Assembly: GCF_000143415.4 (NCBI RefSeq)
Contig: NW_003314271.1
Location: forward strand, 2,347,185 to 2,411,184
Origin: Selaginella moellendorffii
Taxonomy: Eukaryota; Plantae; Lycopodiophyta
Direction of reading: 5' to 3'
DNA length: 64,000 nucleotides
Part shown: in pieces, positions 26,601-55,092 of the stretch
Numbering within the stretch: the stretch's first letter is position 1
How the letters are laid out: every line of letters begins with the position of its first letter
The notes under the pieces: model-generated
What the model was told of the DNA's origin: nothing
Databases searched by the model: none
The model's input: only the letters and a program-made list of their open reading frames with translations
Position numbers and translations under genes: made by a program

Positions 26601-28515
26601 CTCTTTTAGCGAGAACTGAACCAATAAAAAGGAGCAAACCACCCCAGGTGGTCAAGTGAGTCTCTAAGTTGGAGAGACTATCCTCCTTAGAGGATGGGCA
26701 AGGCATGGTGAGCCTTTGGTGTCGAACCATTGACGAATATGAAGAAGGTATGGTGAGCCTTCAATGTCAAACCATTGACAAATATTGGCTAGGGGCCAAG
26801 GATGGAAATGGTAACACATGCGGGTGTTACTTTATAAAATGGTTTACCGTTCGATGAGGACATCGAACTTCGTCTATGGGTGGTGGAGTTGTGAGACACA
26901 AAATCCCTAGGCCCCAAAGTGGAGCTGGAAAGGGTGCCACGTGGTAGTGGCCGAAGCGAAAGCCAAACAAGCGTAACACATTTGGACTAAAAGCTCCGAC
27001 TTGGAAGGTCAAGAGCGGGAGTGGAACTCCCAACAAAGTGCTCGAGGAACAAGCACGAAGCGAGCAATAAGCAAGGCTCCAAAAAGGGACCCAAAAAGGA
27101 CCAACACATGACACGTGGAAGTGTCCAAGGTGGAGTCCGAGGTGGAGTCCGAGATGGAGTCCAAGATGGAGTCCAAAGTGGAGTCCGAGATGGACCGAGA
27201 CGGAGTCCGAGATGGACCGAGACGAAGTCCGAGATGGACCGAGACGGAGTCCGAGATGGAGTCCGAGATGGACCCGAGATGGAGTCCGAGATGGAGTCCG
27301 AAGTGGAGTCCGAGATGGAGTCCGAGATGGACCGAGATGGAGTCCGAGATGGACCCGAGACGGAATCCAAGATGGAGTCCGAGAAAGACCCGAGATGAAG
27401 TCCGAGGTCGAGACCGAGACCGGGACCAAGACCGAGACCGAGGCAGAGGCGGAGGCCGAGGCCGAGTCCGAGTCCAAGTCCGAGTCCGAGTCCAAGTCCG
27501 AGTCCGAGTTCGAGTCTGAGAGGGTGAAAGCCCAAAGCGTTCGTCTCCCAGACCCTGGGGGGTTTGGTGAGCTCCAAAAGTATAGTAAGGGGGAGGACTG
27601 CAGTGGAGCCAGTTTGGCCAGGAAAGGCCAATTTGGCCCAAGAAGGCCAGACCCAGTGTTGGGTGATGAACTGACCACTAGGAAGTCCAAGACTAGAGTG
27701 AATACAAATTGACAAGCGGGGTAGCTTGGTGAAGTGTTCAAGAGCCGGCTCTAGTCCCCCCGAGAGATCGACTGGCCGATGCTCCCAGTCCAAGTGTGGG
27801 TGGCACTACCTACTTGGATACCAGGCGTGGCTCAACGGAACCTCACTCTAAGCCCATGGCTAGAGCACCTAAAGGCGGAAGGTGGGGAGAGTACCCACGG
27901 GGCTCGCATAGGCCCACGGTGTTTCGAAATGTTGTCCTGGAGTCCCAAATGGAGAAAGGAGGAAGAGCAGTCCTCTAGTGTGGTGACTAAGGATACAGTC
28001 ACATGGTGAGGAAGCCACGGAGGACCATGGGACTTAGTGGTCGGGCCTGTGGGCCTTGATCGAGTGGCAGTGTTGGCGAACATGGCCATGGACAGAAAAG
28101 GGACTTGGTAGGAACTGACAAAGGGATATTGGGGAATGCTATTCTCCATGTCTGTGGGCATCCTAAGGATGCTAAAGAGTGGATCTGGGTCGACCACTCG
28201 TGGACGGATGGCCCAATCTTGGAGAGACGGGATTGTGATGCAAGTGGTATTGGACCACTAGTGCGGCAAAGGTGAATGGGCATGGCCTTAGCGTAACGGG
28301 CCGATATGTTAGTGGTGCCTTTGGGTGTCGGTCTTGGGACCAGACACGTGGAGCACTTGGACTAAGTGCAAGCGATGAGTGGCATGGATGCCATTCTTGG
28401 GCTAGCAAGCCCCAAGTCCTGAATTGGACTTAAGGAGGTTGTGAATGAGACTCCTCCAAGCGGTTGAAGGTGTGGTTAAGTGACTAAAGTAGAATGGAAA
28501 AATTAGTCACTTACA
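23640..28515 (+). mobile_element. Family E copy 1: non-coding internal region plus 3' LTR (26890-28515), related to B
   Basis: Same pre-LTR GTTCGATG..CATCGAACTT..TATGGGTGGTGGAGT as B; LTR TGTGAG...CTTACA; shares the 3' structured module (25430-25830) with B. Confidence 0.8.
27125..27520. repeat. Expanded GAGTCC/GAGATG minisatellite in the E LTR
   Basis: Tandem gagtccgagatg units, reverse complement of the B LTR unit type; source of the low-complexity 200-300 aa ORFs. Confidence 0.9.
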
Positions 28516-28539: not shown

Positions 28540-30315
28540 ATAGAGCTATTGCTATGGAATCAAAATAATACCTCAAGGATGGAGGTAATGATTCTATGTT
28601 GCTTGGGGCAACAATCAAAGGATAGAAGCAGAAGACTAGAGGCTAAGAATGGGCCATGGAAATCATTAGAAGGAATCCAAAAGAAAAAGTTAGGTGAGAA
28701 ACACTCATATGTTTGGTACTAACAGATTATGGAAAGGGAAATATATTTCTCATGATGGATTTCTAAATATTCTAATTTTGCGGAGCAAAAGCTCCAAGGG
28801 AGGGAGCAGCAAGGTAACCAAATGATAAGGCCGTAAACAACCCTAGCATAAACTATAGAAAGATAAAACTTAGTGTCTAGAATGGCACGAAATAGAATAG
28901 AAGATGATGGTGCCCTTTAGTAAAGAACTTCCTAAGATGGGGAAGTTGAGTTTCCACAACATGTGCAATGCAAGGTGTCAAAGACACCTAGGAAATTAAC
29001 TGTAAAAAATCAAAATTAAAAGTTCCAAAGTGCGATAGTTATGCTGGTAGAGGCCGAGGCTATTCTTGAATAAGTAGTCAAATTGAAATAAAGACGATGT
29101 CTCTAATGCATTTAGCATGAACTAAACAAACAAAAGGGGAAGGACCACCATAAGTGGTCTAATAAGTTTCTAAATTGGAAACACTATACTCCTTAGAGGA
29201 TGGACAAGGCATGGTGAGCTTTCAATGTCAAACCATTGACGAATATTAGTTAGGTGCCAAGGATAGAAAAGGTAATACATGTTAGTGTTGTTTTATAAAA
29301 TGGTTTATCGTTTGATAAGGATGTTGAACTTCGTCTATGGGTAGTGGAGTTGTGAGACACAAATCCTAGAGCCCCAAAAGTAGAGCCGAAAGAATGCCAT
29401 ATGGTAGTGGCCGAAGTGGAAGCCAAACGAGAGTAATATGTTTGGACTAAAAGCTCCAACTTGGATAGTCAAGAGTGGGAGTGGAACTCCCAATGAAGTG
29501 CTCGAGGAATGAGCACAAAGCAAGCAGTAAATGAGTCTCTAGAAAAAGGACACAAGAGGACTAACACATGACATGTGAAGAAGTTTGAAATAGACCCAAA
29601 GTGGAGTCCAAGATGGAGTTCAAGATAGACCTGAGATGGAATTTGAGATAGAGTTCGAGAGCACCCAAATAGAGCACCCAAATGCAAAAGGTGAAGAGAG
29701 TACCCATAAGGTTCATATAGGGCCATAGTGTTCCGAAATGTTATTTTAAAGTCCTAGACCATGGAAAGGAAGAAGGCAACCTTCTAGTGTAATGACCAAG
29801 GATATGGTCACATGGTGATGAAGTCCTAAAGGACAGTGGGACTTAGTGGTCAGGCCAGTGGGCCTTAACTCAATGGTAGTATTGGCGAACACGGCCATAG
29901 ACAAAAAGAGACTTGGTGAAGACTAAAAAAGGGGTATTGGGGAAAATTGTTTCCCATGTTTGTGGGCATTCTAAGGATGCTAAAGAGTGGATCTGGGATG
30001 ACAATTCATAGACGGATGGCCCAATCTTTGAGAGATGGGACTGTGATGCAAATGGTATGTGACCACCAGTGTGGCAAAGGTAAATAGGCATGGCTTTAGT
30101 GTAATGGGCTGATATGTCGGTGGTACCTTTAAATGTCGATCATGGGATGGAGCACTTGGACCAAGTGTAAAGGTTGAGTGGCATGGATGTTATTCTCAAG
30201 GCCAGCAAGCTCCAAGTCTGAAACAAAACTTATGGAGGTTGTGAGTGAGACTCCTCCAAATGGTTGAAGGTGTGGTTAAGAGACTAAAGTAAAATGAAAA
30301 ATTTAGTCACTTACA
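28540..30315 (+). mobile_element. Family E copy 2: older 3' internal fragment plus internally deleted LTR (29351-30315)
   Basis: Collinear with ~26060-28515, more AT-shifted; TGTGAGAC...CACTTACA. Confidence 0.82.
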
Positions 30316-31184
30316 CAATAATAGAAGAAATTTACTATCCTAAATGGTACAAGGGGTGCAAGAAGATGGCATTGCTCCTATAAACCAAAGTCTAAGAGCA
30401 CTCCATATATCATATTCAGTGATTATGAGCCTCTAGATCTAGTCAAATTGGACAATCCACTAGCTTCACTTGTTCACTAGGAGGGACTGGAAAAGTATTG
30501 TGAGTGCAAGTGAAAAATTGGTTCAACTAGTTGGCCAAGTTAAGTGGGCTTAGAACATGGGATACATAAGAGCAAATTGCTAAGTTAAACTTAGAGTTGA
30601 AGCACTTAAATTTACTTCAACAAGTGTGCCAAAAGTGGCTATGGTGTCATGGAAAAGAGGAACACTATCATATATCATTGGGCAAAATTCTTCATGATTG
30701 AGAAGAAATAATTAGACCTAAAGTTGGCACTACAGATGCTTGTGAATTATACTGCTACTAGAATAGATATGATACTTAAGCTTACTCAAACCCGATTGTG
30801 ATAGGGATGTGCTTCTTCTTCCAACCTCATATGATGGCTATAATAGTGGTTACTATGTTAACCCTTGTGATCGCCTTGCCATAATCTTGGGACATCGAGG
30901 GAGCCTCAAGGGCTTTTTGCTGAAGTGCAATATAATAACCATTGGCCATGAGGCTCAAGTTGTCCACAAAGGGTTGCATCATAGTTTATTGTTGCTTCAT
31001 AGGGCATTGCTCTGGGTGTAGCTTTTAGCAATGATCATCATTATGAGTTTGAAGGTATATCTTGAAAGAGTAGAGTTCCTCTAAAAGCCACTCTTACTAT
31101 TTTTCTTAGAGTATAAAGTTTTGCTACTGCTACAATAACAAAACCTTATATTGTTAAAGCTTTAATGATTGTTAAATGAAGATG

Positions 31185-32231
31185 TGTTTATGCCACTTTA
31201 CATTTCCACTTGGTTCAAGTACTCCACGTGTTCAATTTCACTACAAACACTCAAAGTACCACTGACATAAAGGCTATATCCATTCACCATTGTCTCATTG
31301 GTAGTCCAAAACCACTCATACCATAGACTTATTTCCCAAGGATTGCGCCACTCGTCTATGAGTGGTCATCCCATAATTACAGTTAACATCCTTAGGATAC
31401 CTAGAGACATGGGGAACACCCTTCCCTAATATCCCTTCTTCAGTCCCCACTAAGTTCCATATCATTCATGGTAGTGCTCATTAATACGGCTACTGAGTTA
31501 GAGCCCAAAGGCCCAACCATTATGTCCCATTGACATTTAAGACTTCCTCACCACGTGACCATACCCTTAGTCACTACACAAAAGAACTACTCCTCTTCCT
31601 TTCTATAAACTAAGACTTTGGGATGATATTTTAAAACACTATGACCCTATGTGAACCATATAGGTACTCTCCCCACTTTTCAACTTTGGGTTCTTTAGCT
31701 ATGTGGCTAGAACAAAGTTTTAATGAGCCATATTAGGTAGTGCCACTCACACTTAGATTGGGAGCATTGACCTTTCAATCTCTTAGGGCAATTAGAGTTG
31801 GCTCTTGAACATTTCACTAATTTACCCTATTTGTCCATTTATGTTTACTCTAGCATTGGACTCCTCAATAGTTATATCATCACCCACCATGTAGATATAA
31901 CCTTCCTATGTTATAATGGGGTTTGGACTCCAAAAGAACTAATTTAGCTAGGAAAGGCCACACTCTCCCTATTATACTTTTGAAACCCCCCCAACCCCCT
32001 TGCCTCAGGATGATCACTTTGGGCTTTCACCCCATGATTTGTATTAGTGTTCAAACTCACTCCCAGACTCAAATTCGGACTCAAACTCAGACTCAATCTC
32101 GGTCTTGATCTCAGTCTCAGACTCCTTCTTGATCCATCTTGGACTCTATCTCGAACTCCTACTCGATCCATCTCAAACTTTATCTTGGCCTCCTTTTTAG
32201 ACTCCATTTCAAACCCATCTCAAACTCCATC
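31185..32231 (-). mobile_element. Decayed family E LTR fragment, cut in its minisatellite by element D
   Basis: Reverse-complement similarity to ~27300-28390; degenerate satellite at 32050-32230. Confidence 0.7.
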
Positions 32232-41019: not shown

Positions 41020-43453
41020 TTATGCGAATGGATTGCCTGACGAGGACGATGATGGTGCTGTTGTTGTTGGATGGTGCTGCTGGAACACTGGAGGAATTTG
41101 CCTGTTAGAGGTTTACACGAACACCACATCACTTTTGAGTGCCAGCTCCTGTAAAGAGAGAGCATCCTAAAAAAAATATGAAGAGTAACGCTTACATGGT
41201 AACTTGAGTGGGCTCCCAATGATAATCTGTGATGTCAACCGGTTTAATCAAGGTTAACTTCTGTTTTTTTTTGTCTCTGCAGGTTCTTACTTGGATGGTA
41301 AAAATTTGGAGGCACTTGTACATGTGTAGTTCCTAGAGGGGCATACTGAAAAAACATTTCAAGTGTAGAGTTTTTCCAAATAATTGTTCCCCTTTTACCT
41401 GACTTTGGGAGTGGTCAAAAGGATTGACACTGGTTGACACTCCAAAGTAGCCCAGACTTTGATTCTGGAGAGAAGAAACAAAAGGGAGGTCATGCAAGAA
41501 AGTCTGCGTATAAAAAAACTACCGATGGAGGTCCGAAAGTGTTCACGTGATGACCAGCTCCCTGTAACAATAAAAGAGATCGTATGTGAGAGAAATGCGT
41601 AGTCTCTTAGATCACTCACTTGTACTCCAACGTTCATGGCTGCTGGATCAAACTGCTGGAAAGTCATCAAAGCAGAATTCGATAGAAAGCCACCCGAAGA
41701 AGAAATCGATGGCGACGGCGCCGCTGGTAGAAAGCCAACTGAAGGCGGCATGGTAAAATTCGGTGAAATTCCTGGAAAGCTCGACGGGAACTGCGGGGGA
41801 GCACCCGGTAAAACTCCCTGTGAAACTTCTGATGGAATGGACTGTGGAAGATTGGCTGGTCCAGGAGCGCTAAAACTCGTGAAATTCGTGCCTGTTTGAG
41901 CTTGAACTGGTCCACTACGTGCAAAAGGATCAGCAGCCAGATCAAGACCCGCGAAACTCGTTGTCACGAAAGGATCCACCTGCATCGGCTGCGAGGAATC
42001 TCCCTCCGGAGAAGAGATGAGATCGATCAGGTCGCGGCTGCCATCGGTGTCGTGTCGAAACTTTGCACTGGCGACACTCTCGTGGTTGCTTGCGTCGCCG
42101 GAGATGAGATCGACCAGACACGGTGTGGAGCTTGACTTGGTTGTCACTGGCGAGCTTCTAGAGTGTGGTACCTTTTGCTGCTGGTCGGTATTAAGATCGA
42201 TCAGACTTCTCGACTTTGTCGCAGATCGTGGTGGCGTCTTTGGATTGTCTGGCTGGTGGGAAGTTTTCTCGTCAGTCATGAGATCTTTGAGAGAGAGCGA
42301 GTTTGAGCGCTGGACTTGTGGAGGTCGAGCTACGGGACTGGTTTGGTCCGGCGCTATGCTCCCGCTAGAGTAGTTTCTTTGCAGCTGCTGGTTCTTTCGT
42401 TTCTCCACCTGGAACGAAAAAGAACAGAGGATCAAACGGCAAAACCAAGAAGAAACTAGCGAATGTTTCTTACTGGAGGTTGTAGAAACTGGCGAATGAC
42501 CGTTTCCCTCTTACTACCACTGGCTGTTTTCTGGTTTGGAGGCGACTGGGGCGAAGATTTCACGTCGTCTTCACCGTTGTCTTCCACAGTCGTACCCCCG
42601 TTTTCTCTTCTTCCGGGGATTGTTCTCACAAAGTCTCGGTTACCGTACGCGAGTCCGCCGTAGCTCGTACGAGGAGAGGGGCGAGCCTCGCGATATTCAG
42701 GAGTTTCACGCATTGGACTACGACTACGCTGCTGGAAAAGAAAAAAAAAAAAAAAACAGAGAAAGAGAATGGAAGGGAAGAAGAACTTTCGGTCATGTTT
42801 AACACTGGTTGTATAGTTATACCTTTTCTCCAGTGAAACGCCTCTGGACGTACACAAGCTTTATAAACTCGCGGATTTTATCGGGATTGCTGATGAGAAA
42901 CGAAAAAAAATCATTTTGCTCTCCTAAAAACACGTCAAGGATCTAAGTACCTGCTGTCTGGGAATATGTTCCTGTCCGAGTTCCATGCCTTGAGGAAAAC
43001 CTGTCGAGCTTGCTACACGAACAAGTGAAAAACGCTGTGAATCTAATTTGCTGCTACTGTAAATTTAGATACATACATCGTTTCCACCGGACTGGAGCTC
43101 GCTGATTTCCCCGGCAGTAAACTTGGCCATGGAAATAGACTTGATGCGATGCAAGAATTCTCGACTGTAAGTACGAGTGAGAAACTGGAAACGAGAAAAG
43201 ATCGAAGAGAGGGAACGAATAAACATACTGAATCCCGCTGCAAAGTGTGCAAATGAAAGTGGAGAAGCTAGTGCACACATATTGCGGTCCCTGCTTAAGA
43301 GAAAAAAAGATAAATTCTCAAGAAAGAGGGGATAAGACCCAAGAATCGTTGTCATACCAGGCTACCACAGTTGACGCATCTTCGATTTCCAGGCAATTTA
43401 AGCAGCCCACGGATGATCTTCTCGTGTCTCTCGTCCTCTTTGCTGGGAGCCAT
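41020..43453 (-). CDS. ArfGAP, AGD14/ZIGA4-like (multi-exon)
   Basis: EDERHEKIIRGLLKLPGNRRCVNCGSL|GPQYVCT..TFICTLCSGI|REFLHRIKSISMAKFT zinc finger; LIDL repeats; ends GNPFA*. Confidence 0.9.
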
Positions 43454-45161
43454 CACACATCCTGCTGGATCTCTAGCTAGAGAATCTAGGCTGGAATTGG
43501 ATTGCCAATCCTGGACAGCATAATCTCTACCCACCTGGACGCAATGCGGGCTAAGGCTTGCTGGGAGCGCCCGACTCAGATCTGGACTGTAACAAAGAGA
43601 AAATGAGTATCCAACAGAATATACACGTGTTTAATAAAATTTTAGATTTAGATTTTTTCTAAACCAAACCCTTAAACACAGGAGTAGAGGAACAAAGGGG
43701 TAAAGCCAAACTCTGATGTATGTAACCCTTTCTTCCTCCTCTCACCTAAGGACTTTCTGCTTGTTATTGCTTGTTATTGGCCGCTCCCAGCTCTCCTCTT
43801 GCAGCAATTGTTGCCCATCAAGCCACCTTGCGTCGCTGATGCTCTGTGCAGCAACCCCGTTGATTTTTGGGAGACACAGCCCCATTGATTCGTTGGTCTC
43901 CCAGCTCTCCAACTGCTCTAGAACTGGTCACCGGCTCCTCCTTGTGCTAGGGCCTTTAGTGACAACTGCTGTACATGATCTGCCTAACTCGCCTACAAAG
44001 GTGGCAAGATTCTCCATGTGCCAAATGTATCTTTGCCACTCCGACTTGCAACTCCTCCACACAGGAGCATTGTGTCTTTACAGCCAATTGTGAGACTCCC
44101 AAAGATTCCCTCCCTACAACTCCACAAAGAATGGCTGAGTTTTGAGCTCCTCACTGAGCACTCTAGGCAACAAGGGAACACCATTGGATTGCAGCCATTT
44201 TAAAGAGATTCTATGAAAAAGCTCTCTAAAGAAGAATAAATTAAGACTAAAAGGTGAAGCCCAATCTAAGTCTAATGATAAATGATAAATGATAAAATGA
44301 TGATTTATTATAATGATAAATGTGAGTTGGGGATTTCAGAGTTGTTTTCAATAGTAGGTTCTTTTCAAGATTAGTGCCAACAGGAGATTTGATGAAAAAC
44401 AGTGGCAATCAAATGAGGATATTCACATGGAGGTGAAGAATATATGTTCAATATATGTTTATGGCTAGGTGCTACTTCTTACTGCCCACAAATTAGAAGC
44501 TAAAATGGTCTAACTTCTTACATAGCCATTAATCACATAGACACATCTTGAACCGTTTGCTCGAATATTATAGGGATATGGTGCTCCATCTTTTGGAATA
44601 GGGACTTCTTTAGATTCGCAATAAAGTAATCCTTCAACTATCAATCCTAGAGCATAGATGGTCCTAATTGAACTCTTATCTGACTTATAACCTACATAAA
44701 CTTGAACAGACTTTTGCTAAACTTTTGCTCCAGCCAATCCAAACTAAGCTCATAGCCTCTAGGATGATACAATAACTAATCCTTATTCATGTTCCATCAA
44801 TATGAGTAGACATAACAAATCCTACCTAGAGAATTGTACCATAAATGAACCACCTATTCACCTCCTTGGCTGTGAACAAGGGATACAAGAGGAAATGCAT
44901 GCCATGATTCTTAGTATATCTTAATTCTCATCTATAAAACCATTTCCTTTGAACACCAGTAGCTTAAACTTTCCTCAGATAGTAGTATCTTGAGGAATTT
45001 GAGCACCTTGGCAATTACAAAAGTCTTAGAGGAGCAATTGACAAGCTTGTATGGTTAGCATGAATATAGAGTTATAAGCAAATGGAACAAATATATCCTC
45101 CTTGTGGTGTATACTTGAATATTTTCTTATCTTTATGTTGATCCGACTATAAAAAAAGTTT

Positions 45162-45908
45162 TGTAAGTGATTAAATTTTCCATTTTATTTAGTAATTTAA
45201 TCACACTTTTAACCATTTTGAGGAGTCTCACATACAACCTTCATAAATTTTATTTTTGACTTCAAACATGTTAACCCTGTGAATAACATTTATTCCCAAC
45301 TTAGGGACATATTAGCCTTGTGGATAACATCTATGCCATTTAGCCTTTGCACTGGGGTGAAGATTTTATATTGTCTTCATTATTGTCTTCCATAGTCAAA
45401 CTTCTGTTTTCTCTTCTTCCAGGGATTGTTCTCACAAAGTCTTAGTTACCAGACACAAGTCTACCATAGCTCATATAAGGAGATTCTATAATAGACACCT
45501 AAAAAATACTACTGATATATTAGCTTGTTACACTAAAATTATATTTATTTACCTTTGTCTTATTGGTAATCCAATAAATGCCCTAGTTCTGTCTCTCAAA
45601 AACTAGGCCATTCATTTATAAGTGGTCATCCCAAGACTACACTTTAACATTCTTAAGATGCTCAAAAACATATAAAACACTTTTCCCCAATATCCAACAT
45701 TTTTCCCCAACATTGTTATTAAGTTAAAGTTTGAATGTTTGACCACTAAGTTCCATTGACATTTAAGACTTCTTTTATCACATGACCATGCCTTTCATTA
45801 TTATGTAAGAGGATTGTTTCTTTTTCTTTCCATAATCTAGGATTTTATGATGACATTTTGAAACACAATGGCCTTATGTAAACCTTATAAATACTCTCCC
45901 CACCTTCT
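45162..45908 (-). mobile_element. Heavily decayed family E LTR remnant carrying an inserted ArfGAP exon fragment (45351-45483)
   Basis: Starts TGTAAGTG (reverse complement of the E LTR end) and is collinear with ~27880-28515 on both sides of the insert. Confidence 0.78.
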
Positions 45909-46675
45909 GTCAAAATAACTGATTTATACAATTGCTTCTTTTCCAATTAGCAAATGAAGTTATTCTATATAATTGCAGTTGACAAATAAAACAAAAGTGT
46001 AAATGAGCATATTTGATTAGCCCAATATATATGGTTCAGATTGAAATCAATTCAATGGTTATTAAAATCCCACTATGTTAATATTAATATTGCATCGTAG
46101 CTGTACACTTAGACTTCACAGTCTCATAACTTAATAATAATTTGAAATAGATTTTTTAGTGATAAAGATAATATAAGCTATTAGCCTCATTTAAATATAA
46201 AACACAAATAAAAAAGGTCAAAATTACATGAAATACATGAATTTAAGTTTTTTCATATAAATCATTTAACTATATTAAAGTGCCATATAAAATAACTATC
46301 ATCAATAGACCATATGCAAGCTCACTATTATATGTTTAATAGTTAATATAAATATATATTTTTAAATTATTATTTTCACATCACTACATATTACTTTTGA
46401 ATGTGGGAAATATTATTGCCATTTTTGTAAATTATATTTAATAAAATCACAATCAACACTCAATATTAAATCTTACAATCTTTTAGAGGTGCAGACCCAT
46501 GAAAATTTTCAGCAACAATTGAAAATGAAAAACTTAGAAATATTAATAACCTAGACCTTTGAGCAAACAAGATTCTTGGGATTATACTCAAGGATCTAGG
46601 GTTTCCTGTGGTTCTTCCGAGGTATGCTCTCTTTCATCTGTCTGTGCACCAGACTAATCAGACCTTCCAGGGGAC

Positions 46676-48100
46676 ATGACATCTCCGGAGCCATTCCACG
46701 CGACCCTGAGACACGCGAGGAGCAAATGGGTGGAAATGGGTCGGCCCCAAAAATCGAGCCGGGGCAAGGCTCACTCCCGAGAATGGCAGGCAAGTGTTCT
46801 CAGAAAGAGAGAACAAACAGAAAAATGGAGAGAAAAAGAAAACCAAAGGCTGAAAACTTTGTAGGAATTCGAGAGCTTCGTCAACTCGGCGTTTGATGCC
46901 CGTGATACATTCACGGTGCACAGGCTGCTCGCCTCGGACGATCACGTCTTCGACAAATGGATGGAGGCTCTGGAGCTCAACGCGCAAGGAAAGCTCCCGC
47001 TGGGCGATGGCAGGCTCCCCACCGGAGGAGGCCTGCCGAGCAACTCCATCTCCATGGCCAGCCTCGTGAGCATCCGCGCGCTGGAGAACGAAGAGCTCCT
47101 CTACGTCGCCGAGCAGCTCGCGAGCAAGGCCTGCCTCTTCCGGAAGTTCCCGAGCTGCGAGATGGACGTGCCTTCTCTGGATCAGCTCGGGAAGAAGCTC
47201 AAGAACAGGAGGTTGATCGCCGAGAGGCTGCTCCAGGAGTGCATCGCCAGCAACATCTTGCCAAGCTACGTTACCAGCGTTTCCGGGCTCAAGAAGAGGC
47301 TCCGGATCAGCGACGAGGAGCTGGACGAGTGGGCGACAGTGGAACCCGAGGCTTGCTCCAAGCTCGCCAAGAAGAAGAAGACGCTCAAGCTTGTGCCGCT
47401 TCCACTTGGTTGGTACTCTCGTCTCCAGGAGAAGCTCGGCGGCGATGAGATCTCGCCATACCTGGTGCGCGAGTGCAGCAAGACGAGCGTCGAATGGATC
47501 GTCAGGCTCTTGGCCGAGAAGCGGAGCGTCAAGCTTATAATCGCGGATCTTCGCCGGTGCCAGGACGGTGATCTTCAGAGCTTGTGTGACAAGTTGCTGC
47601 TAGCGCTCGAGTCGGGGGGCTGCTCCTGCCGCGTGATCTTACTCGTCGCCATCGCCCAGCTCCCCGGGATCATGCATGGAGTGGAGAAGATCGCTCGGAT
47701 CATCAGAGGTGGCGTCAAGGTTGGCAGCGTGATTGATTTCCCGGAGCAAACGCACCACCACACCATGATCGTGAGCTTCGGCACGGGATCACTGGAGAGG
47801 GGTGGAGGAATGAGCCTGTTCTTGCGAGAGGGAGATCACCGCCTTCCAAAAGAGTGGGAAGATCACAAGTTTGCCATGGAGAGGGAGGAGGGATCCATCA
47901 GCCTTGGGCTGGCGAGCCATGTTGTGAGACAGTTCGAGGAGGATGGCGGCGCTTACATCGTCGAGTATGGCTGCGGCGGGCAGATCTTCAAGGCTTGCAT
48001 GATCCACGACCAGAGGGGGATTGTCCTGGTCGAAACTTCGCAAGAGCTGGACAAGATGAAGAGATTGGTCCAAGAGCTGCGAGCTACGAAGAAAAGCTAG
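46676..48100 (+). CDS. Beta-class N6A/N4C DNA methyltransferase-like protein with degenerate catalytic motif; join(46676..46789,46865..48100), ~449 aa
   Basis: Intact GC-rich frame; CAG|GCAAGT..TAG intron keeps frame; motif order SVKLIIADL (IV), ALESGG..VILLV (VI), HHTMIVSF (VIII), LASHVVRQF..GG.YIVEYGCGG (X-I), RGIVLVET (II). The gene is well supported; the fold call is by eye. Confidence 0.6.
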
Positions 48101-48859
48101 CCTTCGAAAGAGGAATTTTTTTTCTACTGAGATGGTGGAAAGCTAGTGATAAAAACATGTAAGATTCTGGATAGTCAAAATGGAAATCAATCATTGTTCT
48201 AATGTTTTTTTTCAGGTAAAGAAATTAAAATTGAATATTAACAATTTTGTCCAGTATTAGTAACAATATTAACAATTTTGTAAGATGCTCCTTGTTGATT
48301 AGCCCTGTGATCTCAACTGCTATACGTTTCAACTAGGAATTGTGATCTACATCAGAAATGAAGTTTAACCGTTACAGCCTCTAAAGCCTTTAACACAAGA
48401 AAAGGCCAAAAAACACTTATATGTGATCCCAACTCAATGCAAAGTTGTAGTGCAAGTTTAGTAAAAAAAGCTGATTTTTTCTTGAAAGAGTGTTCTATTG
48501 ACAAATCTATCTATCCATATGCTCGCTATGTCCACTGTAAACCACCGCCTAGTTGGTGTTTAATAATCATAAATAGGAATAAGAAAAGCAATGGTTGTGT
48601 ACGATTTTTAAACACCCATTAAAAAGAATAATAATAAAATCTGGAACCAGAGCTTTTTTACATGTGCTGGAAAAAAGGTATAGAATATTCTCCTAGAGAA
48701 AATGGCGTCGTTGTCGGGGATTAATGGCGCAGATGTACGTGCATACGTGGCAAGAGCGAGGAAGGTGTTGAGGAAGCTACCTCCGCGGATCCTCGCAACA
48801 TCCTATTTTTTTAAACACAAGAAACAAGTTTTCTAATGGTTTGCCCTAATAGCGATTCC

Positions 48860-49290: not shown

Positions 49291-49503
49291 GAGAGAGGCT
49301 TTTCCCCAAATCATTTCCATTCAATCGCTTCGGAGGAAAGTGTGACCCCGCGGGGTGTGGTGTACCGCTCCAATTCCATCCGAAAATCCGGCCGGATCTT
49401 CCAGCGCCGCCAGGAAAGTTCTCGCAGGTTTGGGTGGATCTCTGGCGAGTTTTTTCCTCGATTCGATCGCTACAACACCGCGCCGCAGCAGCACAGCGCA
49501 GTG

Positions 49504-50451
49504 ATGGATCAAGGAGGCAGCGGCGGTGGCGCCACTGGCGCCAGCGCGAGGAGGAGCAGGCCCTCGGCGCTCAAGATGAGCAAGGATTCCAGGGCGATCC
49601 GCAAGCCGCCGGTGCCGCTGCCCGTGGTGCAGTACCGGCAGCCCGTGATCATCCACACGTACTCCCCCAAAGTGATCGAGACCGACGCCACCAATTTCAT
49701 GTGGCTCGTCCAGCGCCTCACCGGATCATCCGACACCCGGAGGCGATGCAAGACCTCCAAGCCGGCAGTGCTGCCCACCTTCATGCCCAGCAGCCCATCC
49801 CACTCGCCCAGATCCTTGCCCACCACTGCCAGGAATTCCTCTCCTTGGAAGCGGGAGATCGTGGAGGAGGAGCCAGTGATCAATCAGCGCCACCGGCACC
49901 ACCAATTATCCGGCTCGCCCAGCAGCGAAGAAGCCGAAGATCCAGAGCTCCTCCGCTCCTCCTCCGCCGGGGACGACGATTCCTCCTCCATTTCCGACCT
50001 GCAGCAGCAATTCAAGGTGGAGCACCTCCTCCTCTCGCCGGCATCCAGCTCCGACTCGGGCAATCCCTTCCACCGCCTGGCGAATCCACTGCTCGCGTCG
50101 CCGAAAAGCCCCCTGGTCAGCTTCGATGCCGCGGGGCTCGCGTTTGGAGATCAGCACCGCCACTTCCTCCCCAATCCCTTCTCCACCTCCTCCTCGCTCG
50201 CTTCCAATGGCGAGCCATCGGTCTACGTTCCACAGATGACGATCCAGCAGCAGCAGCCATGGTCCCCCATTTTCACTCCCAGTGGAATCTCCCACGCGGA
50301 CTTCCTCCCCGAGTTCGATCTCTGGACGACGATGAGCTCCTCTTCTTCCGAGTTTCACGGCCTCTCTCCTCGCAGCAAGCTGTTTGGGCCGATGCAGTCG
50401 CCCGCTACCATGGCTTTCCGGGACATGGCCTTCGCCTTCGTCAAGGACTAG
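49504..50451 (+). CDS. VQ-motif protein, MKS1-like (intronless)
   Basis: RPSALKMSKDSRAIRKP...RQPVIIHTYSPKVIET...NFMWLVQRLTG (FxxxVQxLTG). Confidence 0.92.
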   Translation: MDQGGSGGGATGASARRSRPSALKMSKDSRAIRKPPVPLPVVQYRQPVIIHTYSPKVIETDATNFMWLVQRLTGSSDTRRRCKTSKPAVLPTFMPSSPSHSPRSLPTTARNSSPWKREIVEEEPVINQRHRHHQLSGSPSSEEAEDPELLRSSSAGDDDSSSISDLQQQFKVEHLLLSPASSSDSGNPFHRLANPLLASPKSPLVSFDAAGLAFGDQHRHFLPNPFSTSSSLASNGEPSVYVPQMTIQQQQPWSPIFTPSGISHADFLPEFDLWTTMSSSSSEFHGLSPRSKLFGPMQSPATMAFRDMAFAFVKD

Positions 50452-53403: not shown

Positions 53404-53627
53404 TCCTCGCCAGATTAGGGCAAAACAAGCAAGAGCTTTGAGAGTATTCGAACCGGTACACAGCAACACTTTAGGGTTTTTTCGCGCGTAAGCAAGAACT
53501 TTGAGAGGATTCGAACCGTTACCCGACAGCACTTAGGGCTTTTCCAGGGCGCGCGCGACGCGAGCTTCGTTTTCGTCCCTTCCGCCCTGGCGCGCGGCGG
53601 GGATCGATCGCTCGGTCCATCAGGTAG

Positions 53628-55092
<1,465 letters not shown>

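What the first reader, a model, noticed from the sequence alone, without database searches (positions are those of the whole stretch)
46676..48100. Host gene resembling a prokaryote-type beta-class amino-DNA methyltransferase with a dead catalytic motif
Seen: an intact ~449-aa gene with a telo-box-containing 5' region and short introns, located among housekeeping genes. Its C-terminal half follows the beta-class order: SVKLIIADLRR (47525-47557; canonical SVDLIxxDPPY), LALESGG.CRVILLV (canonical LKPGG.hhh), HHTMIVSF, then LGLASHVVRQFEEDGGAYIVEYGCGGQIFKACMIHDQRGIVLVET (canonical L..LI...S..GD.VLDPFxGSGTT..AA...GR..IGIE). Known: Marchantia has horizontally acquired N4-cytosine methyltransferases of this class. 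Inference: a domesticated, probably inactive (DPPY to DLRR) methyltransferase-fold DNA or chromatin factor of transposon or bacterial origin.
Basis: partly seen in the sequence, partly recalled or inferred. Interest (0 to 1): 0.8.

Follow-up and report, generated by a model that had tools for sequence, protein, structure and literature searches.

The report
Orphan Selaginella gene, dead methyltransferase-like fold
A single-copy gene of the clubmoss Selaginella moellendorffii, with no detectable sequence relatives anywhere, encodes a protein whose second half is predicted to fold like a bacterial or phage DNA amino-methyltransferase but lacks the catalytic motif, so it is probably a non-catalytic remnant; the evidence is structural prediction only.

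Summary
The gene at 46676-48100 (+) is SELMODRAFT_409495 / LOC9650508 of Selaginella moellendorffii. It is intact, has one short intron and encodes 449-451 aa. It lies between an ArfGAP gene and a VQ-motif gene, and a telo-box sits 72 nt upstream.

- **Sequence:** the protein is an orphan. Pfam, NCBIfam, PHROGs and PDB sequences give nothing, and neither do two word searches or an exhaustive phmmer run over 1.84 billion representatives. A 72-sequence PF01555 profile scores at noise level (hhalign P about 0.04, and the reversed sequence scores the same).
- **Structure:** the ESM Atlas model of residues 225-451 has almost only PF01555 clusters as nearest structural neighbours (TM by query 0.61-0.70 over about 200 residues). 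My own AlphaFold models are poor, and their PDB matches are all weak (none at E <= 0.001), though the C-terminal one is led by permuted amino-methyltransferases (MTA1, CcrM, METTL3).
- **Motifs:** a motif I/II-like unit (IVEYGCGG...VLVE) sits at the very C-terminus. There is no (D/N/S)PP(Y/F/W) anywhere.

The two haplotypes differ at only 6 of 1425 bases, against 6-14% in the flanks.

Earlier scan notes describe transposon-borne ParB plus methyltransferase genes in this genome. I could not test descent from them.

The parts
46597..46604 (-). Telo-box (AAACCCTA), 72 nt upstream of the start codon
   Evidence: There are 4 such sites in the window against 2.25 expected, so only the position is suggestive. 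A second one (53472-53479) lies upstream of the WDR5-like gene.
46676..46795 (+). Exon 1, residues 1-40 in the GenBank model. The RefSeq model ends it at 46789.
   Evidence: Joining the exons in a local script reproduces P0001.
46796..46864 (+). The only intron. It is 69 nt with a GT donor, or 75 nt from 46790 with a GC donor (CAG|GCAAGT) in the RefSeq model. It contains an in-frame TAG at 46862-46864.
   Evidence: The P0001 and P0002 models differ by the two residues AS. The other-haplotype allele has no difference within the intron. Splicing was not verified with reads.
46865..48100 (+). Exon 2, residues 41-451 plus the stop codon
46676..47416 (+). N-terminal half (residues 1-224). It is predicted mostly helical and matches no family. 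A KKKK run at 47369-47380 (residues 209-212) looks like a nuclear localisation signal.
   Evidence: Secondary structure (low confidence). One search gives only a sub-threshold HTH_17 hit at residues 162-197 (E 0.078). for the KKKK run.
47417..48097 (+). C-terminal domain (residues 225-451), predicted to have a permuted, beta-class-like SAM-methyltransferase fold
   Evidence: TM by query 0.61-0.70 over 194-204 aligned residues to eight PF01555-bearing clusters; the leading Foldseek PDB matches are MTA1, CcrM, METTL3-14, HpyAVI and TTHA0409 at E 1e-3 to 4e-2, none at E <= 0.001; the strand and helix order fits beta3'-alphaC-beta4-alphaD-beta5-alphaE-beta6-beta7-gap-alphaZ-beta1-alphaA-beta2-alphaB.
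47525..47557 (+). SVKLIIADLRR (residues 261-271). This is the beta4 strand plus the loop where motif IV (DPPY) should be. Only D268 is kept.
   Evidence: hmmsearch, hhalign and MAFFT --add all place SVKLIIAD on the family's SVDLIFAD. Each score is at noise level. There is no PP dipeptide in the whole protein.
47957..47980 (+). IVEYGCGG (residues 405-412). A motif I-like strand and glycine loop, the candidate SAM-binding site.
   Evidence: The pattern is found in 0.19% of shuffles.
48023..48034 (+). VLVE (residues 427-430). A motif II-like strand ending in an acidic residue, aligned to the family's IGIE. Only one helix follows before the stop codon.
   Evidence: Motifs I and II together occur in 0.07% of shuffles.

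Best explanation
This is a lineage-restricted, single-copy and probably expressed nuclear gene of Selaginella moellendorffii. Its product has a helical N-terminal half and a C-terminal domain of about 225 residues.

That domain adopts the circularly permuted SAM-methyltransferase fold of beta-class amino-methyltransferases (the PF01555 kind). The catalytic-loop strand comes first, and the SAM-binding strand-loop-helix-strand comes last.

The SAM-pocket elements are recognisable: IVEYGCGG, followed by an acidic residue at the end of the next strand. The catalytic and base-flipping loop (D/N/S)PP(Y/F/W) is replaced by DLRR. The family's HPTQKP motif and most of the target-recognition insert are gone.

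I therefore read the protein as a pseudo-methyltransferase. It cannot methylate an exocyclic amino group of a base. It probably acts non-catalytically, as a nucleic-acid, chromatin or SAM-binding factor or as a partner of another enzyme, in the way METTL14 or DNMT3L work beside active enzymes.

Shown: the gene structure, the orphan status, the absence of the motif, and conservation between haplotypes. Predicted: the fold. Inferred: SAM binding, nuclear location, the non-catalytic role, and any descent from a bacterial, viral or transposon methyltransferase.
For: **Fold**
- For residues 225-451, the ESM Atlas's own model has as nearest structural neighbours eight PF01555-bearing clusters and one unnamed cluster, at TM by query 0.61-0.70 with 194-204 residues aligned. 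Feature similarity is 0.93-0.94 to unnamed clusters and 0.89 to a PF01555 cluster (the whole protein).
- An independent but poor AlphaFold2 model of the same residues gives Foldseek PDB matches led by MTA1, CcrM, METTL3-METTL14, M1.HpyAVI and TTHA0409. About 30 of the top 50 are permuted amino-methyltransferases, at E 1e-3 to 4e-2.
- The order of secondary-structure elements fits PF01555.

**Register**
- Three alignment methods agree that SVKLIIAD equals SVDLIFAD, IVEYGCGG equals VLDPFxGSG, and VLVE equals IGIE.
- The motif I plus II pattern at the extreme C-terminus occurs in 0.07% of shuffles. Only one helix follows it, so a complete Rossmann sheet needs the upstream strands, which means a permuted order.

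**Dead site:** no [DNS]PP[YFWH] and no PP dipeptide anywhere.

**A real and constrained gene**
- It is intact in both haplotypes, with 6 substitutions in 1425 nt (4 synonymous, 2 not) and no indels.
- Identity is 99.58%, against 98.2% for the VQ ORF, 98.6% for the ArfGAP region and 86-94% for intergenic DNA.
- GC3 is 0.78, like its neighbours.
- Seventeen run assemblies of only 18-57 Mb, guessed to be RNA, hold 56-87% of the words of a stretch whose mature-mRNA share would be about 0.8-0.87.
Against: - No sequence method sees a relationship. Pfam at E <= 10, NCBIfam, PHROGs and PDB sequences give nothing.
- phmmer over 1.84 billion representatives finds only the protein itself, as do the word searches.
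- hhalign against a narrow YhdJ profile gives a probability of 0.2%.
- Against a diverse 72-sequence PF01555 profile, hhalign scores 19.6. That is P about 0.04 from 300 shuffles, and the reversed sequence scores 19.0.
- Among 834 six-frame ORFs of the window, this gene's ORF does not reach E < 10 with that profile.
- The Atlas model has mean pLDDT of only 0.60 and pTM 0.44. My AlphaFold2 models have pLDDT 40 and 43.
- VIA-align against 48,161 PDB chains gives Z <= 6.5 to generic class I methyltransferases and other Rossmann-like folds. A shape search of the Atlas with my own model gives mixed families.
- A structure predictor built on a language model may turn a weak motif resemblance into a family-like fold.
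- No ortholog is available, so there is no alignment depth and no real dN/dS.
Confidence: 0.5

Rival explanations
1. It is a lineage-specific orphan protein with a generic alpha/beta (Rossmann-like) C-terminal domain that is unrelated to amino-methyltransferases. On this reading the motif resemblances are chance, and the predicted-structure matches are artefacts of low-confidence models.
For: All sequence and profile tests are at noise level, and the reversed sequence scores as well as the real one. The AlphaFold2 models have pLDDT 40-43. VIA-align gives Z <= 6.5 to many unrelated Rossmann-like chains. An Atlas shape search with my own model returns AAA, SGNH, TIR and assorted methyltransferases.
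Against: The Atlas's own model gives a nearly uniform list of PF01555 clusters at TM 0.61-0.70 over about 200 residues, and not a mixture of families. Foldseek matches of an independent model are dominated by permuted amino-methyltransferases. The hh[DE]xGxG...hhh[DE] unit at the very C-terminus is rare by chance (0.07%), and three aligners pick the same collinear register.
Confidence: 0.27
2. It is a domesticated descendant of the ParB plus beta-class methyltransferase-fold cargo gene that earlier notes of this scan report on MULE and Sola1-like DNA transposons of this genome. On this reading it lost the ParB part and now serves the host, for example in recognising or repressing those elements.
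For: Earlier scan notes, which I did not check, describe many such cargo genes in this genome with a non-canonical motif IV, FDMPDG or FDLPNG. The present protein has ADLRR...DG at the same place. The Atlas neighbours include ParB_N plus PF01555 fusion clusters. This is a special case of the best explanation.
Against: Neither phmmer nor the word searches link P0001 to any other Selaginella protein. The N-terminal half is helical and not ParB-like. There are no terminal repeats and no transposase next to the gene. I could not fetch the cargo proteins, so no direct comparison was made.
Confidence: 0.13
3. It is an active methyltransferase with an unconventional active site, acting on a substrate other than a base amino group, or using the DLRR loop in a new way.
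For: The motif I/II-like SAM-binding elements look preserved, and the gene is conserved between haplotypes.
Against: No beta-class or MT-A70 enzyme is known to me to work without the (D/N/S/E)PP(Y/F/W/L)-type loop (my own knowledge). The family's other invariant positions (HPTQKP, and W and F residues of the core) are also missing, and the insert between beta7 and alphaZ is only about 38 residues.
Confidence: 0.06
4. It is an annotated ORF without function, evolving neutrally.
For: It has no relatives anywhere. The two RefSeq alleles are modelled differently, at 449 aa and 379 aa.
Against: It is the best-conserved stretch between the two haplotypes in the 14 kb compared. It has no indels and no stop codon, in a genome where the flanks differ by 6-14%. 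Its GC3 of 0.78 matches host genes. Small assemblies that look like RNA, from 10 studies, contain it.
Confidence: 0.04

Closest known systems
Beta-class N6-adenine / N4-cytosine DNA methyltransferases (Pfam PF01555 N6_N4_Mtase; for example CcrM, M1.HpyAVI, TTHA0409, E. coli YhdJ and phage ParB-methyltransferase fusions)
   Same: The predicted fold and order of elements are the same: the catalytic-loop strand first and the SAM-binding glycine loop and acidic strand last. The domain size is about 220 residues, and the C-terminus ends one helix after the motif II strand.
   Different: There is no HMM match at all. DPPY is replaced by DLRR. HPTQKP and the conserved W and F core residues are absent. 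The target-recognition insert is very short. An unrelated helical half of 224 residues is added at the N-terminus. It is a spliced eukaryotic host gene.
Marchantia MpDN4MT1a/b and the bdelloid rotifer N4CMT (eukaryotic N4-cytosine methyltransferases acquired from bacteria)
   Same: These are eukaryotic genes with a beta-class amino-methyltransferase domain, one of them in an early-diverging land plant (PMC8885841 and PMC12344493 as listed).
   Different: Those enzymes keep the catalytic motif (TSPPY in Marchantia), cluster with prokaryotic enzymes by sequence, and are active. The Selaginella protein has no detectable sequence similarity and no catalytic motif.
Pseudo-methyltransferase partners such as METTL14 and MTA9 (MT-A70 family) or DNMT3L
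   Same: They have a methyltransferase fold with a degenerate catalytic motif and work non-catalytically beside an active enzyme (my own knowledge). Chains of the MTA1 and METTL3-14 complexes are among the leading, though weak, Foldseek matches.
   Different: There is no Pfam MT-A70 match. The glycine-rich motif I at the C-terminus is of the PF01555 or class I type. No partner enzyme is known here.
ParB plus beta-class methyltransferase-fold cargo genes of Selaginella MULE and Sola1-like transposons
   Same: They are in the same genome, have the same predicted fold class, and also have a non-canonical motif IV (FDMPDG / FDLPNG).
   Different: The present gene is single-copy, lies between host genes, has no ParB-like part and has no transposon features. 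No sequence link was found or could be tested.

Membership tests
PF01555 N6_N4_Mtase (beta-class amino-methyltransferases) | Match to the family HMM at or above the gathering score | tested here: not met
   There is no Pfam hit even at E <= 10 for the whole protein, residues 225-451, or the 394-aa ORF. My own 72-sequence profile gives -2.9 bits.
PF01555 N6_N4_Mtase (beta-class amino-methyltransferases) | Catalytic motif IV (D/N/S)PP(Y/F/W) after strand beta4 | tested here: not met
   The aligned position reads ADLRR (residues 267-271). No such motif and no PP dipeptide exists anywhere in the protein.
PF01555 N6_N4_Mtase (beta-class amino-methyltransferases) | Permuted order: motif IV region N-terminal, motif I (FxGxG) and the motif II acidic strand C-terminal | tested here: met
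   SVKLIIAD is at 261-268, IVEYGCGG at 405-412 and VLVE at 427-430, 21 residues before the end. The first glycine of FxGxG is C or shifted by one, so the loop is closer to the class I hhExGxGxG type.
PF01555 N6_N4_Mtase (beta-class amino-methyltransferases) | Three-dimensional fold of the family | tested here: inconclusive
   The Atlas model's neighbours are PF01555 clusters at TM 0.61-0.70, and the Foldseek matches are led by the family and by MT-A70. But both sides are predictions, pLDDT is 0.60 (Atlas) and 43 (mine), and VIA-align gives Z <= 6.5.
PF01555 N6_N4_Mtase (beta-class amino-methyltransferases) | Conserved HPTQKP-type motif before helix alphaZ, and the core W and F residues | tested here: not met
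   Family columns conserved at 82-100% align to E, E, G, S, I, S or to gaps in the query.
PF01555 N6_N4_Mtase (beta-class amino-methyltransferases) | SAM-dependent methyl transfer to N6 of adenine or N4 of cytosine | not testable with these tools
   This needs a biochemical assay.
MT-A70 (PF05063; METTL3, METTL14, MTA1) | HMM match and a DPPW or EPPL-type loop | tested here: not met
   There is no Pfam hit and no such loop. Only weak Foldseek matches at E 1e-3 to 3e-2 and TM 0.22-0.29.
Transposon-borne ParB plus methyltransferase cargo family of Selaginella (earlier scan notes) | Sequence or profile similarity to the cargo proteins, an N-terminal ParB-like domain, and location in a MULE or Sola element | not tested
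   The cargo sequences could not be fetched. What I did test: no ParB_N Pfam hit, no flanking repeats or transposase, and no Selaginella paralogue by phmmer.

The most novel reading that the evidence does not exclude
A host-domesticated, catalytically dead descendant of the methyltransferase cargo gene of Selaginella DNA transposons (or of an older bacterial or viral acquisition). It would have diverged beyond sequence recognition and would now work as a SAM-sensing or DNA-binding regulator, for instance in recognising or silencing the very elements it came from.
Probability: 0.13. Interest if true: 0.65.

Novelty: new variant of a known kind. Interest (0 to 1): 0.4.

Why it matters
Beta-class amino-methyltransferases in eukaryotes are rare. 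Where they have been studied, in Marchantia sperm and in bdelloid rotifers, they created new epigenetic marks.

A plant host gene that keeps this fold but has lost the catalytic loop would be the first pseudo-enzyme of this class that I know of in plants. If it is linked to the transposon-borne methyltransferase-like genes reported in the same genome, it would be a case of domestication of a transposon's DNA-modification module.

It also shows how an 'orphan' gene can be placed by structure when sequence fails. As it stands the case rests on predicted structures of modest confidence, so it is a lead and not a result.

Tried and rejected
**Searches that found nothing**
1. Pfam, NCBIfam and PHROGs scans of the whole protein and of both halves gave nothing.
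   - The YaeQ hit on the first ORF (E 1.4e-4, below the cut-off) is rejected, because it runs through residues translated from the intron.
   - The HTH_17 hit at residues 162-197 (E 0.078) is below any threshold.
2. PDB sequence search gave nothing at E <= 10.
3. Word searches and the exhaustive phmmer search found only the protein's own cluster, which holds the two haplotype alleles in two gene models each.

**Profile tests**
4. I built a PF01555 profile. E. coli YhdJ homologues gave too narrow a set, so I added 69 distinct viral relatives from IMG/VR. Neither hmmsearch --max nor hhalign was significant.
5. A six-frame scan of the window with that profile found no methyltransferase-like ORF.

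**Structure**
6. AlphaFold2 without an alignment, on the whole protein and on residues 225-451, gave pLDDT 40 and 43.
   - Foldseek PDB matches of the whole-protein model are meaningless.
   - BFVD, the Atlas shape search and VIA-align wide on the domain model gave mixed, weak matches.
   - I did not build an alignment seeded with methyltransferases for AlphaFold2, because that would be circular.

**Reads and expression**
   - Splicing and expression therefore could not be read directly.

**Context, literature and the cargo family**
8. A search for flanking repeats found none around the gene.
9. A literature search for the locus names gave no paper.
10. The transposon cargo proteins mentioned in earlier notes could not be fetched with the tools and caps left.

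**How the spliced product was handled:** database searches used the stored id P0001 or window references. The exons were joined only in a local script, to check the gene model.
Full report
**What is there**

The window comes from Selaginella moellendorffii. The long ORF at 46916-48100 (+) matches NCBI protein EFJ30523.1 (SELMODRAFT_409495, 451 aa, stored as P0001) at 100% identity. Its 90%-identity cluster has four members:
- the 451-aa GenBank model;
- the 449-aa RefSeq model XP_024528744.1 (LOC9650508);
- two models of the allele on the second assembled haplotype, of 451 and 379 aa.

The 62-codon ORF at 46676 and the long ORF are in the same frame, separated by one TAG. The annotated models remove it as an intron:
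- 46796-46864 in the GenBank model (69 nt, GT donor);
- 46790-46864 in the RefSeq model (75 nt, GC donor in the strong context CAG|GCAAGT).

So there is one short intron, not several. A telo-box lies at 46597-46604 on the minus strand, 72 nt before the ATG. Four such sites in the window against 2.25 expected is not an enrichment.

**Context**

The other haplotype (L001, scaffold GL377594.1) is collinear over the 14 kb compared. An ArfGAP gene lies upstream on the opposite strand and a VQ-motif gene downstream. A WDR5-like gene follows at 53691-54404.

GC3 of the gene is 0.78, like its neighbours at 0.80 and 0.87. No direct or inverted repeats flank the gene, and no other copy exists in the window. 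It is a resident, single-copy host gene and does not lie within a transposon.

**Is it a real, constrained gene?**

The two haplotype alleles differ at 6 of 1425 positions, 4 synonymous and 2 replacement (T198R, I330V). There are no changes in the intron and no indels.

| Stretch | Identity between haplotypes |
|---|---|
| This gene | 99.58% |
| VQ ORF | 98.2% |
| ArfGAP region | 98.6% |
| Adjacent intergenic DNA | 86-94% |

The counts are too small for a dN/dS estimate, but the gene is the best-conserved stretch locally.

For expression, twenty public runs hold part of 46560-48260. Seventeen of them are guessed to be RNA. Their assemblies are only 18-57 Mb and their word shares reach a plateau at 0.82-0.87. 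A spliced mRNA without promoter and intron would give about that share. I sent those letters to no search tool afterwards and masked them in my scripts.

**Sequence relatives: none**

- Pfam (E <= 10), NCBIfam and PHROGs give nothing for the whole protein or for either half.
- The PDB sequence search gives nothing.
- Two word searches find only the protein itself.
- The exhaustive phmmer run over 1.84 billion cluster representatives also finds only the protein itself.

The weak YaeQ hit covers intron-encoded residues and is an artefact.

**Direct test of the methyltransferase claim by sequence**

I took E. coli YhdJ, a PF01555 enzyme, from the K-12 record. Its close homologues gave a narrow profile. 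I then added 69 distinct viral relatives of 29-98% identity to make a 72-sequence profile.
- hhalign of residues 225-451 against the narrow profile gives probability 0.2%.
- hmmsearch with all filters off against the broad profile gives -2.9 bits. Its only local match is EKRSVKLIIAD on edesvdLIFAD.
However, 13 of 300 shuffles reach that score and the reversed sequence scores 19.0.
- In a six-frame scan of the window with the profile, the gene does not reach E < 10.

Sequence alone therefore does not establish homology. What it does show is consistency. Three different aligners put SVKLIIAD on the beta4 strand (SVDLIFAD), IVEYGCGG on motif I, and VLVE on the IGIE strand.

The unit hh[DE]xGxG, then 14-24 residues, then hhh[DE] sits 21 residues from the C-terminus. 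It occurs in 0.07% of composition-preserving shuffles, though the pattern was chosen after seeing the sequence. Only one helix follows it. A complete Rossmann sheet can therefore form only with the strands upstream, which is the permuted, beta-class order.

**Structure**

The ESM Atlas holds a model of this protein (pLDDT 0.60, pTM 0.44). For residues 225-451, its nearest structural neighbours are eight clusters annotated PF01555 (several with ParB_N) plus one unnamed cluster. TM by query is 0.61-0.70 with 194-204 residues aligned. By language-model features the domain scores 0.93-0.94 to unnamed clusters and 0.89 to a PF01555 cluster (the whole protein). A generic Rossmann domain would be expected to give a mixture of families, not this uniform list.

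My own AlphaFold2 runs had no alignment to work from and are poor, at pLDDT 40 for the whole protein and 43 for the domain. Even so:
- Their strand and helix order fits beta3'-alphaC-beta4-alphaD-beta5-alphaE-beta6-beta7, a gap of about 38 residues, then alphaZ-beta1-alphaA-beta2-alphaB.
- Foldseek of the domain model against the PDB is led by Tetrahymena MTA1, CcrM, METTL3-METTL14, M1.HpyAVI and TTHA0409. About 30 of the top 50 are permuted amino-methyltransferases, with E from 1e-3 to 4e-2 and TM of only 0.22-0.31.

The other searches with that model are uninformative. BFVD gives mixed matches. The Atlas shape search gives mixed matches. VIA-align against 48,161 chains gives Z <= 6.5 to generic class I methyltransferases and other Rossmann-like chains. 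The whole-protein model gives noise.

I rate the permuted methyltransferase fold as likely, at about two in three, but not established.

**Catalytic site**

If the fold assignment holds, motif IV is ADLRR. The protein contains no [DNS]PP[YFWH] and not a single PP dipeptide. The family's nearly invariant HPTQKP and several core W and F positions are also unmatched. The insert that carries target recognition is short.

The glycine loop (YGCGG), the acidic residue before it (E407) and the acidic end of the next strand (E430) are kept. So the SAM pocket may survive while the base-binding and catalytic loop does not.

**Reading**

My best explanation, at confidence about 0.5, is a lineage-restricted pseudo-methyltransferase.
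- It has a beta-class-like SAM-methyltransferase fold joined to a helical N-terminal half. That half carries a KKKK run at residues 209-212, which suggests a nuclear location.
- It is unable to methylate base amino groups.
- It probably acts by binding nucleic acid, chromatin, SAM or a partner enzyme, as METTL14, MTA9 or DNMT3L do.

It is not a member of PF01555 by the family's own criteria. It resembles the family in predicted fold and motif order only. It is also not like the Marchantia MpDN4MT1 enzymes, which keep TSPPY and cluster with bacterial enzymes by sequence.

**A lead from earlier notes**

Earlier notes of this scan, which are unchecked, report many MULE and Sola1-like transposons in this genome. 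These carry a spliced ParB plus beta-class methyltransferase-fold gene with a non-canonical motif IV, FDMPDG or FDLPNG. One such element lies 676 kb upstream on the same scaffold.

Descent of the present gene from that cargo would explain both a methyltransferase fold in a plant host gene and its odd motif IV. I could not fetch those proteins, and phmmer links P0001 to no other Selaginella protein. I give this special case about 0.13.

**Rivals**

| Rival reading | Confidence |
|---|---|
| Unrelated orphan with a generic alpha/beta domain | 0.27 |
| Active enzyme with an unconventional site | 0.06 |
| Functionless ORF | 0.04 |

**Novelty**

UniProt and NCBI call the protein uncharacterised, and no paper in the library names it. 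If the fold holds, it is a new, very divergent, motif-less variant of a known kind. My interest is moderate, because the claim rests on predictions of modest confidence and no ortholog is at hand.

Noticed in passing
window 44167-46049 (against L001 4529-5339): The AT-rich upstream intergenic stretch is about 1.1 kb longer here than in the other haplotype. It contains a dispersed repeat (about 45160-45910) with 65-80% identical copies at 28124-28515, 29685-30318, 31275-31679 and 42545-42677. This is probably a small non-autonomous transposon whose insertion is polymorphic between the haplotypes.
   Followed up: partly
window 46790-46864: The GenBank and RefSeq models differ in the intron donor: GT at 46796 against GC at 46790, in the context CAG|GCAAGT, which looks like a GC-AG intron. 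RefSeq starts the other haplotype's allele at M73 (46961), so the first 72 residues are uncertain.
   Followed up: partly
window 53472-53479: A second telo-box lies about 210 nt upstream of the WDR5-like ORF (53691-54404).
   Followed up: no
window 49342-50448: A VQ-motif gene (PF05678, E 1e-12) lies directly downstream. It differs more between haplotypes (98.2% identity, with two indels) than the gene under study.
   Followed up: partly
The letters were masked in all later scripts and sent to no search tool.
   Followed up: no
same scaffold, about 676 kb before the window, and other pieces of the genome: Earlier scan notes report 44 findings of MULE or Sola1-like transposons carrying ParB plus beta-class methyltransferase-fold genes with motif IV FDMPDG / FDLPNG. 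They may be the source family of the present gene.
   Followed up: no
L001 141-623: A DUF7086 (PF23324) gene lies beyond the ArfGAP gene on the other haplotype.
   Followed up: no
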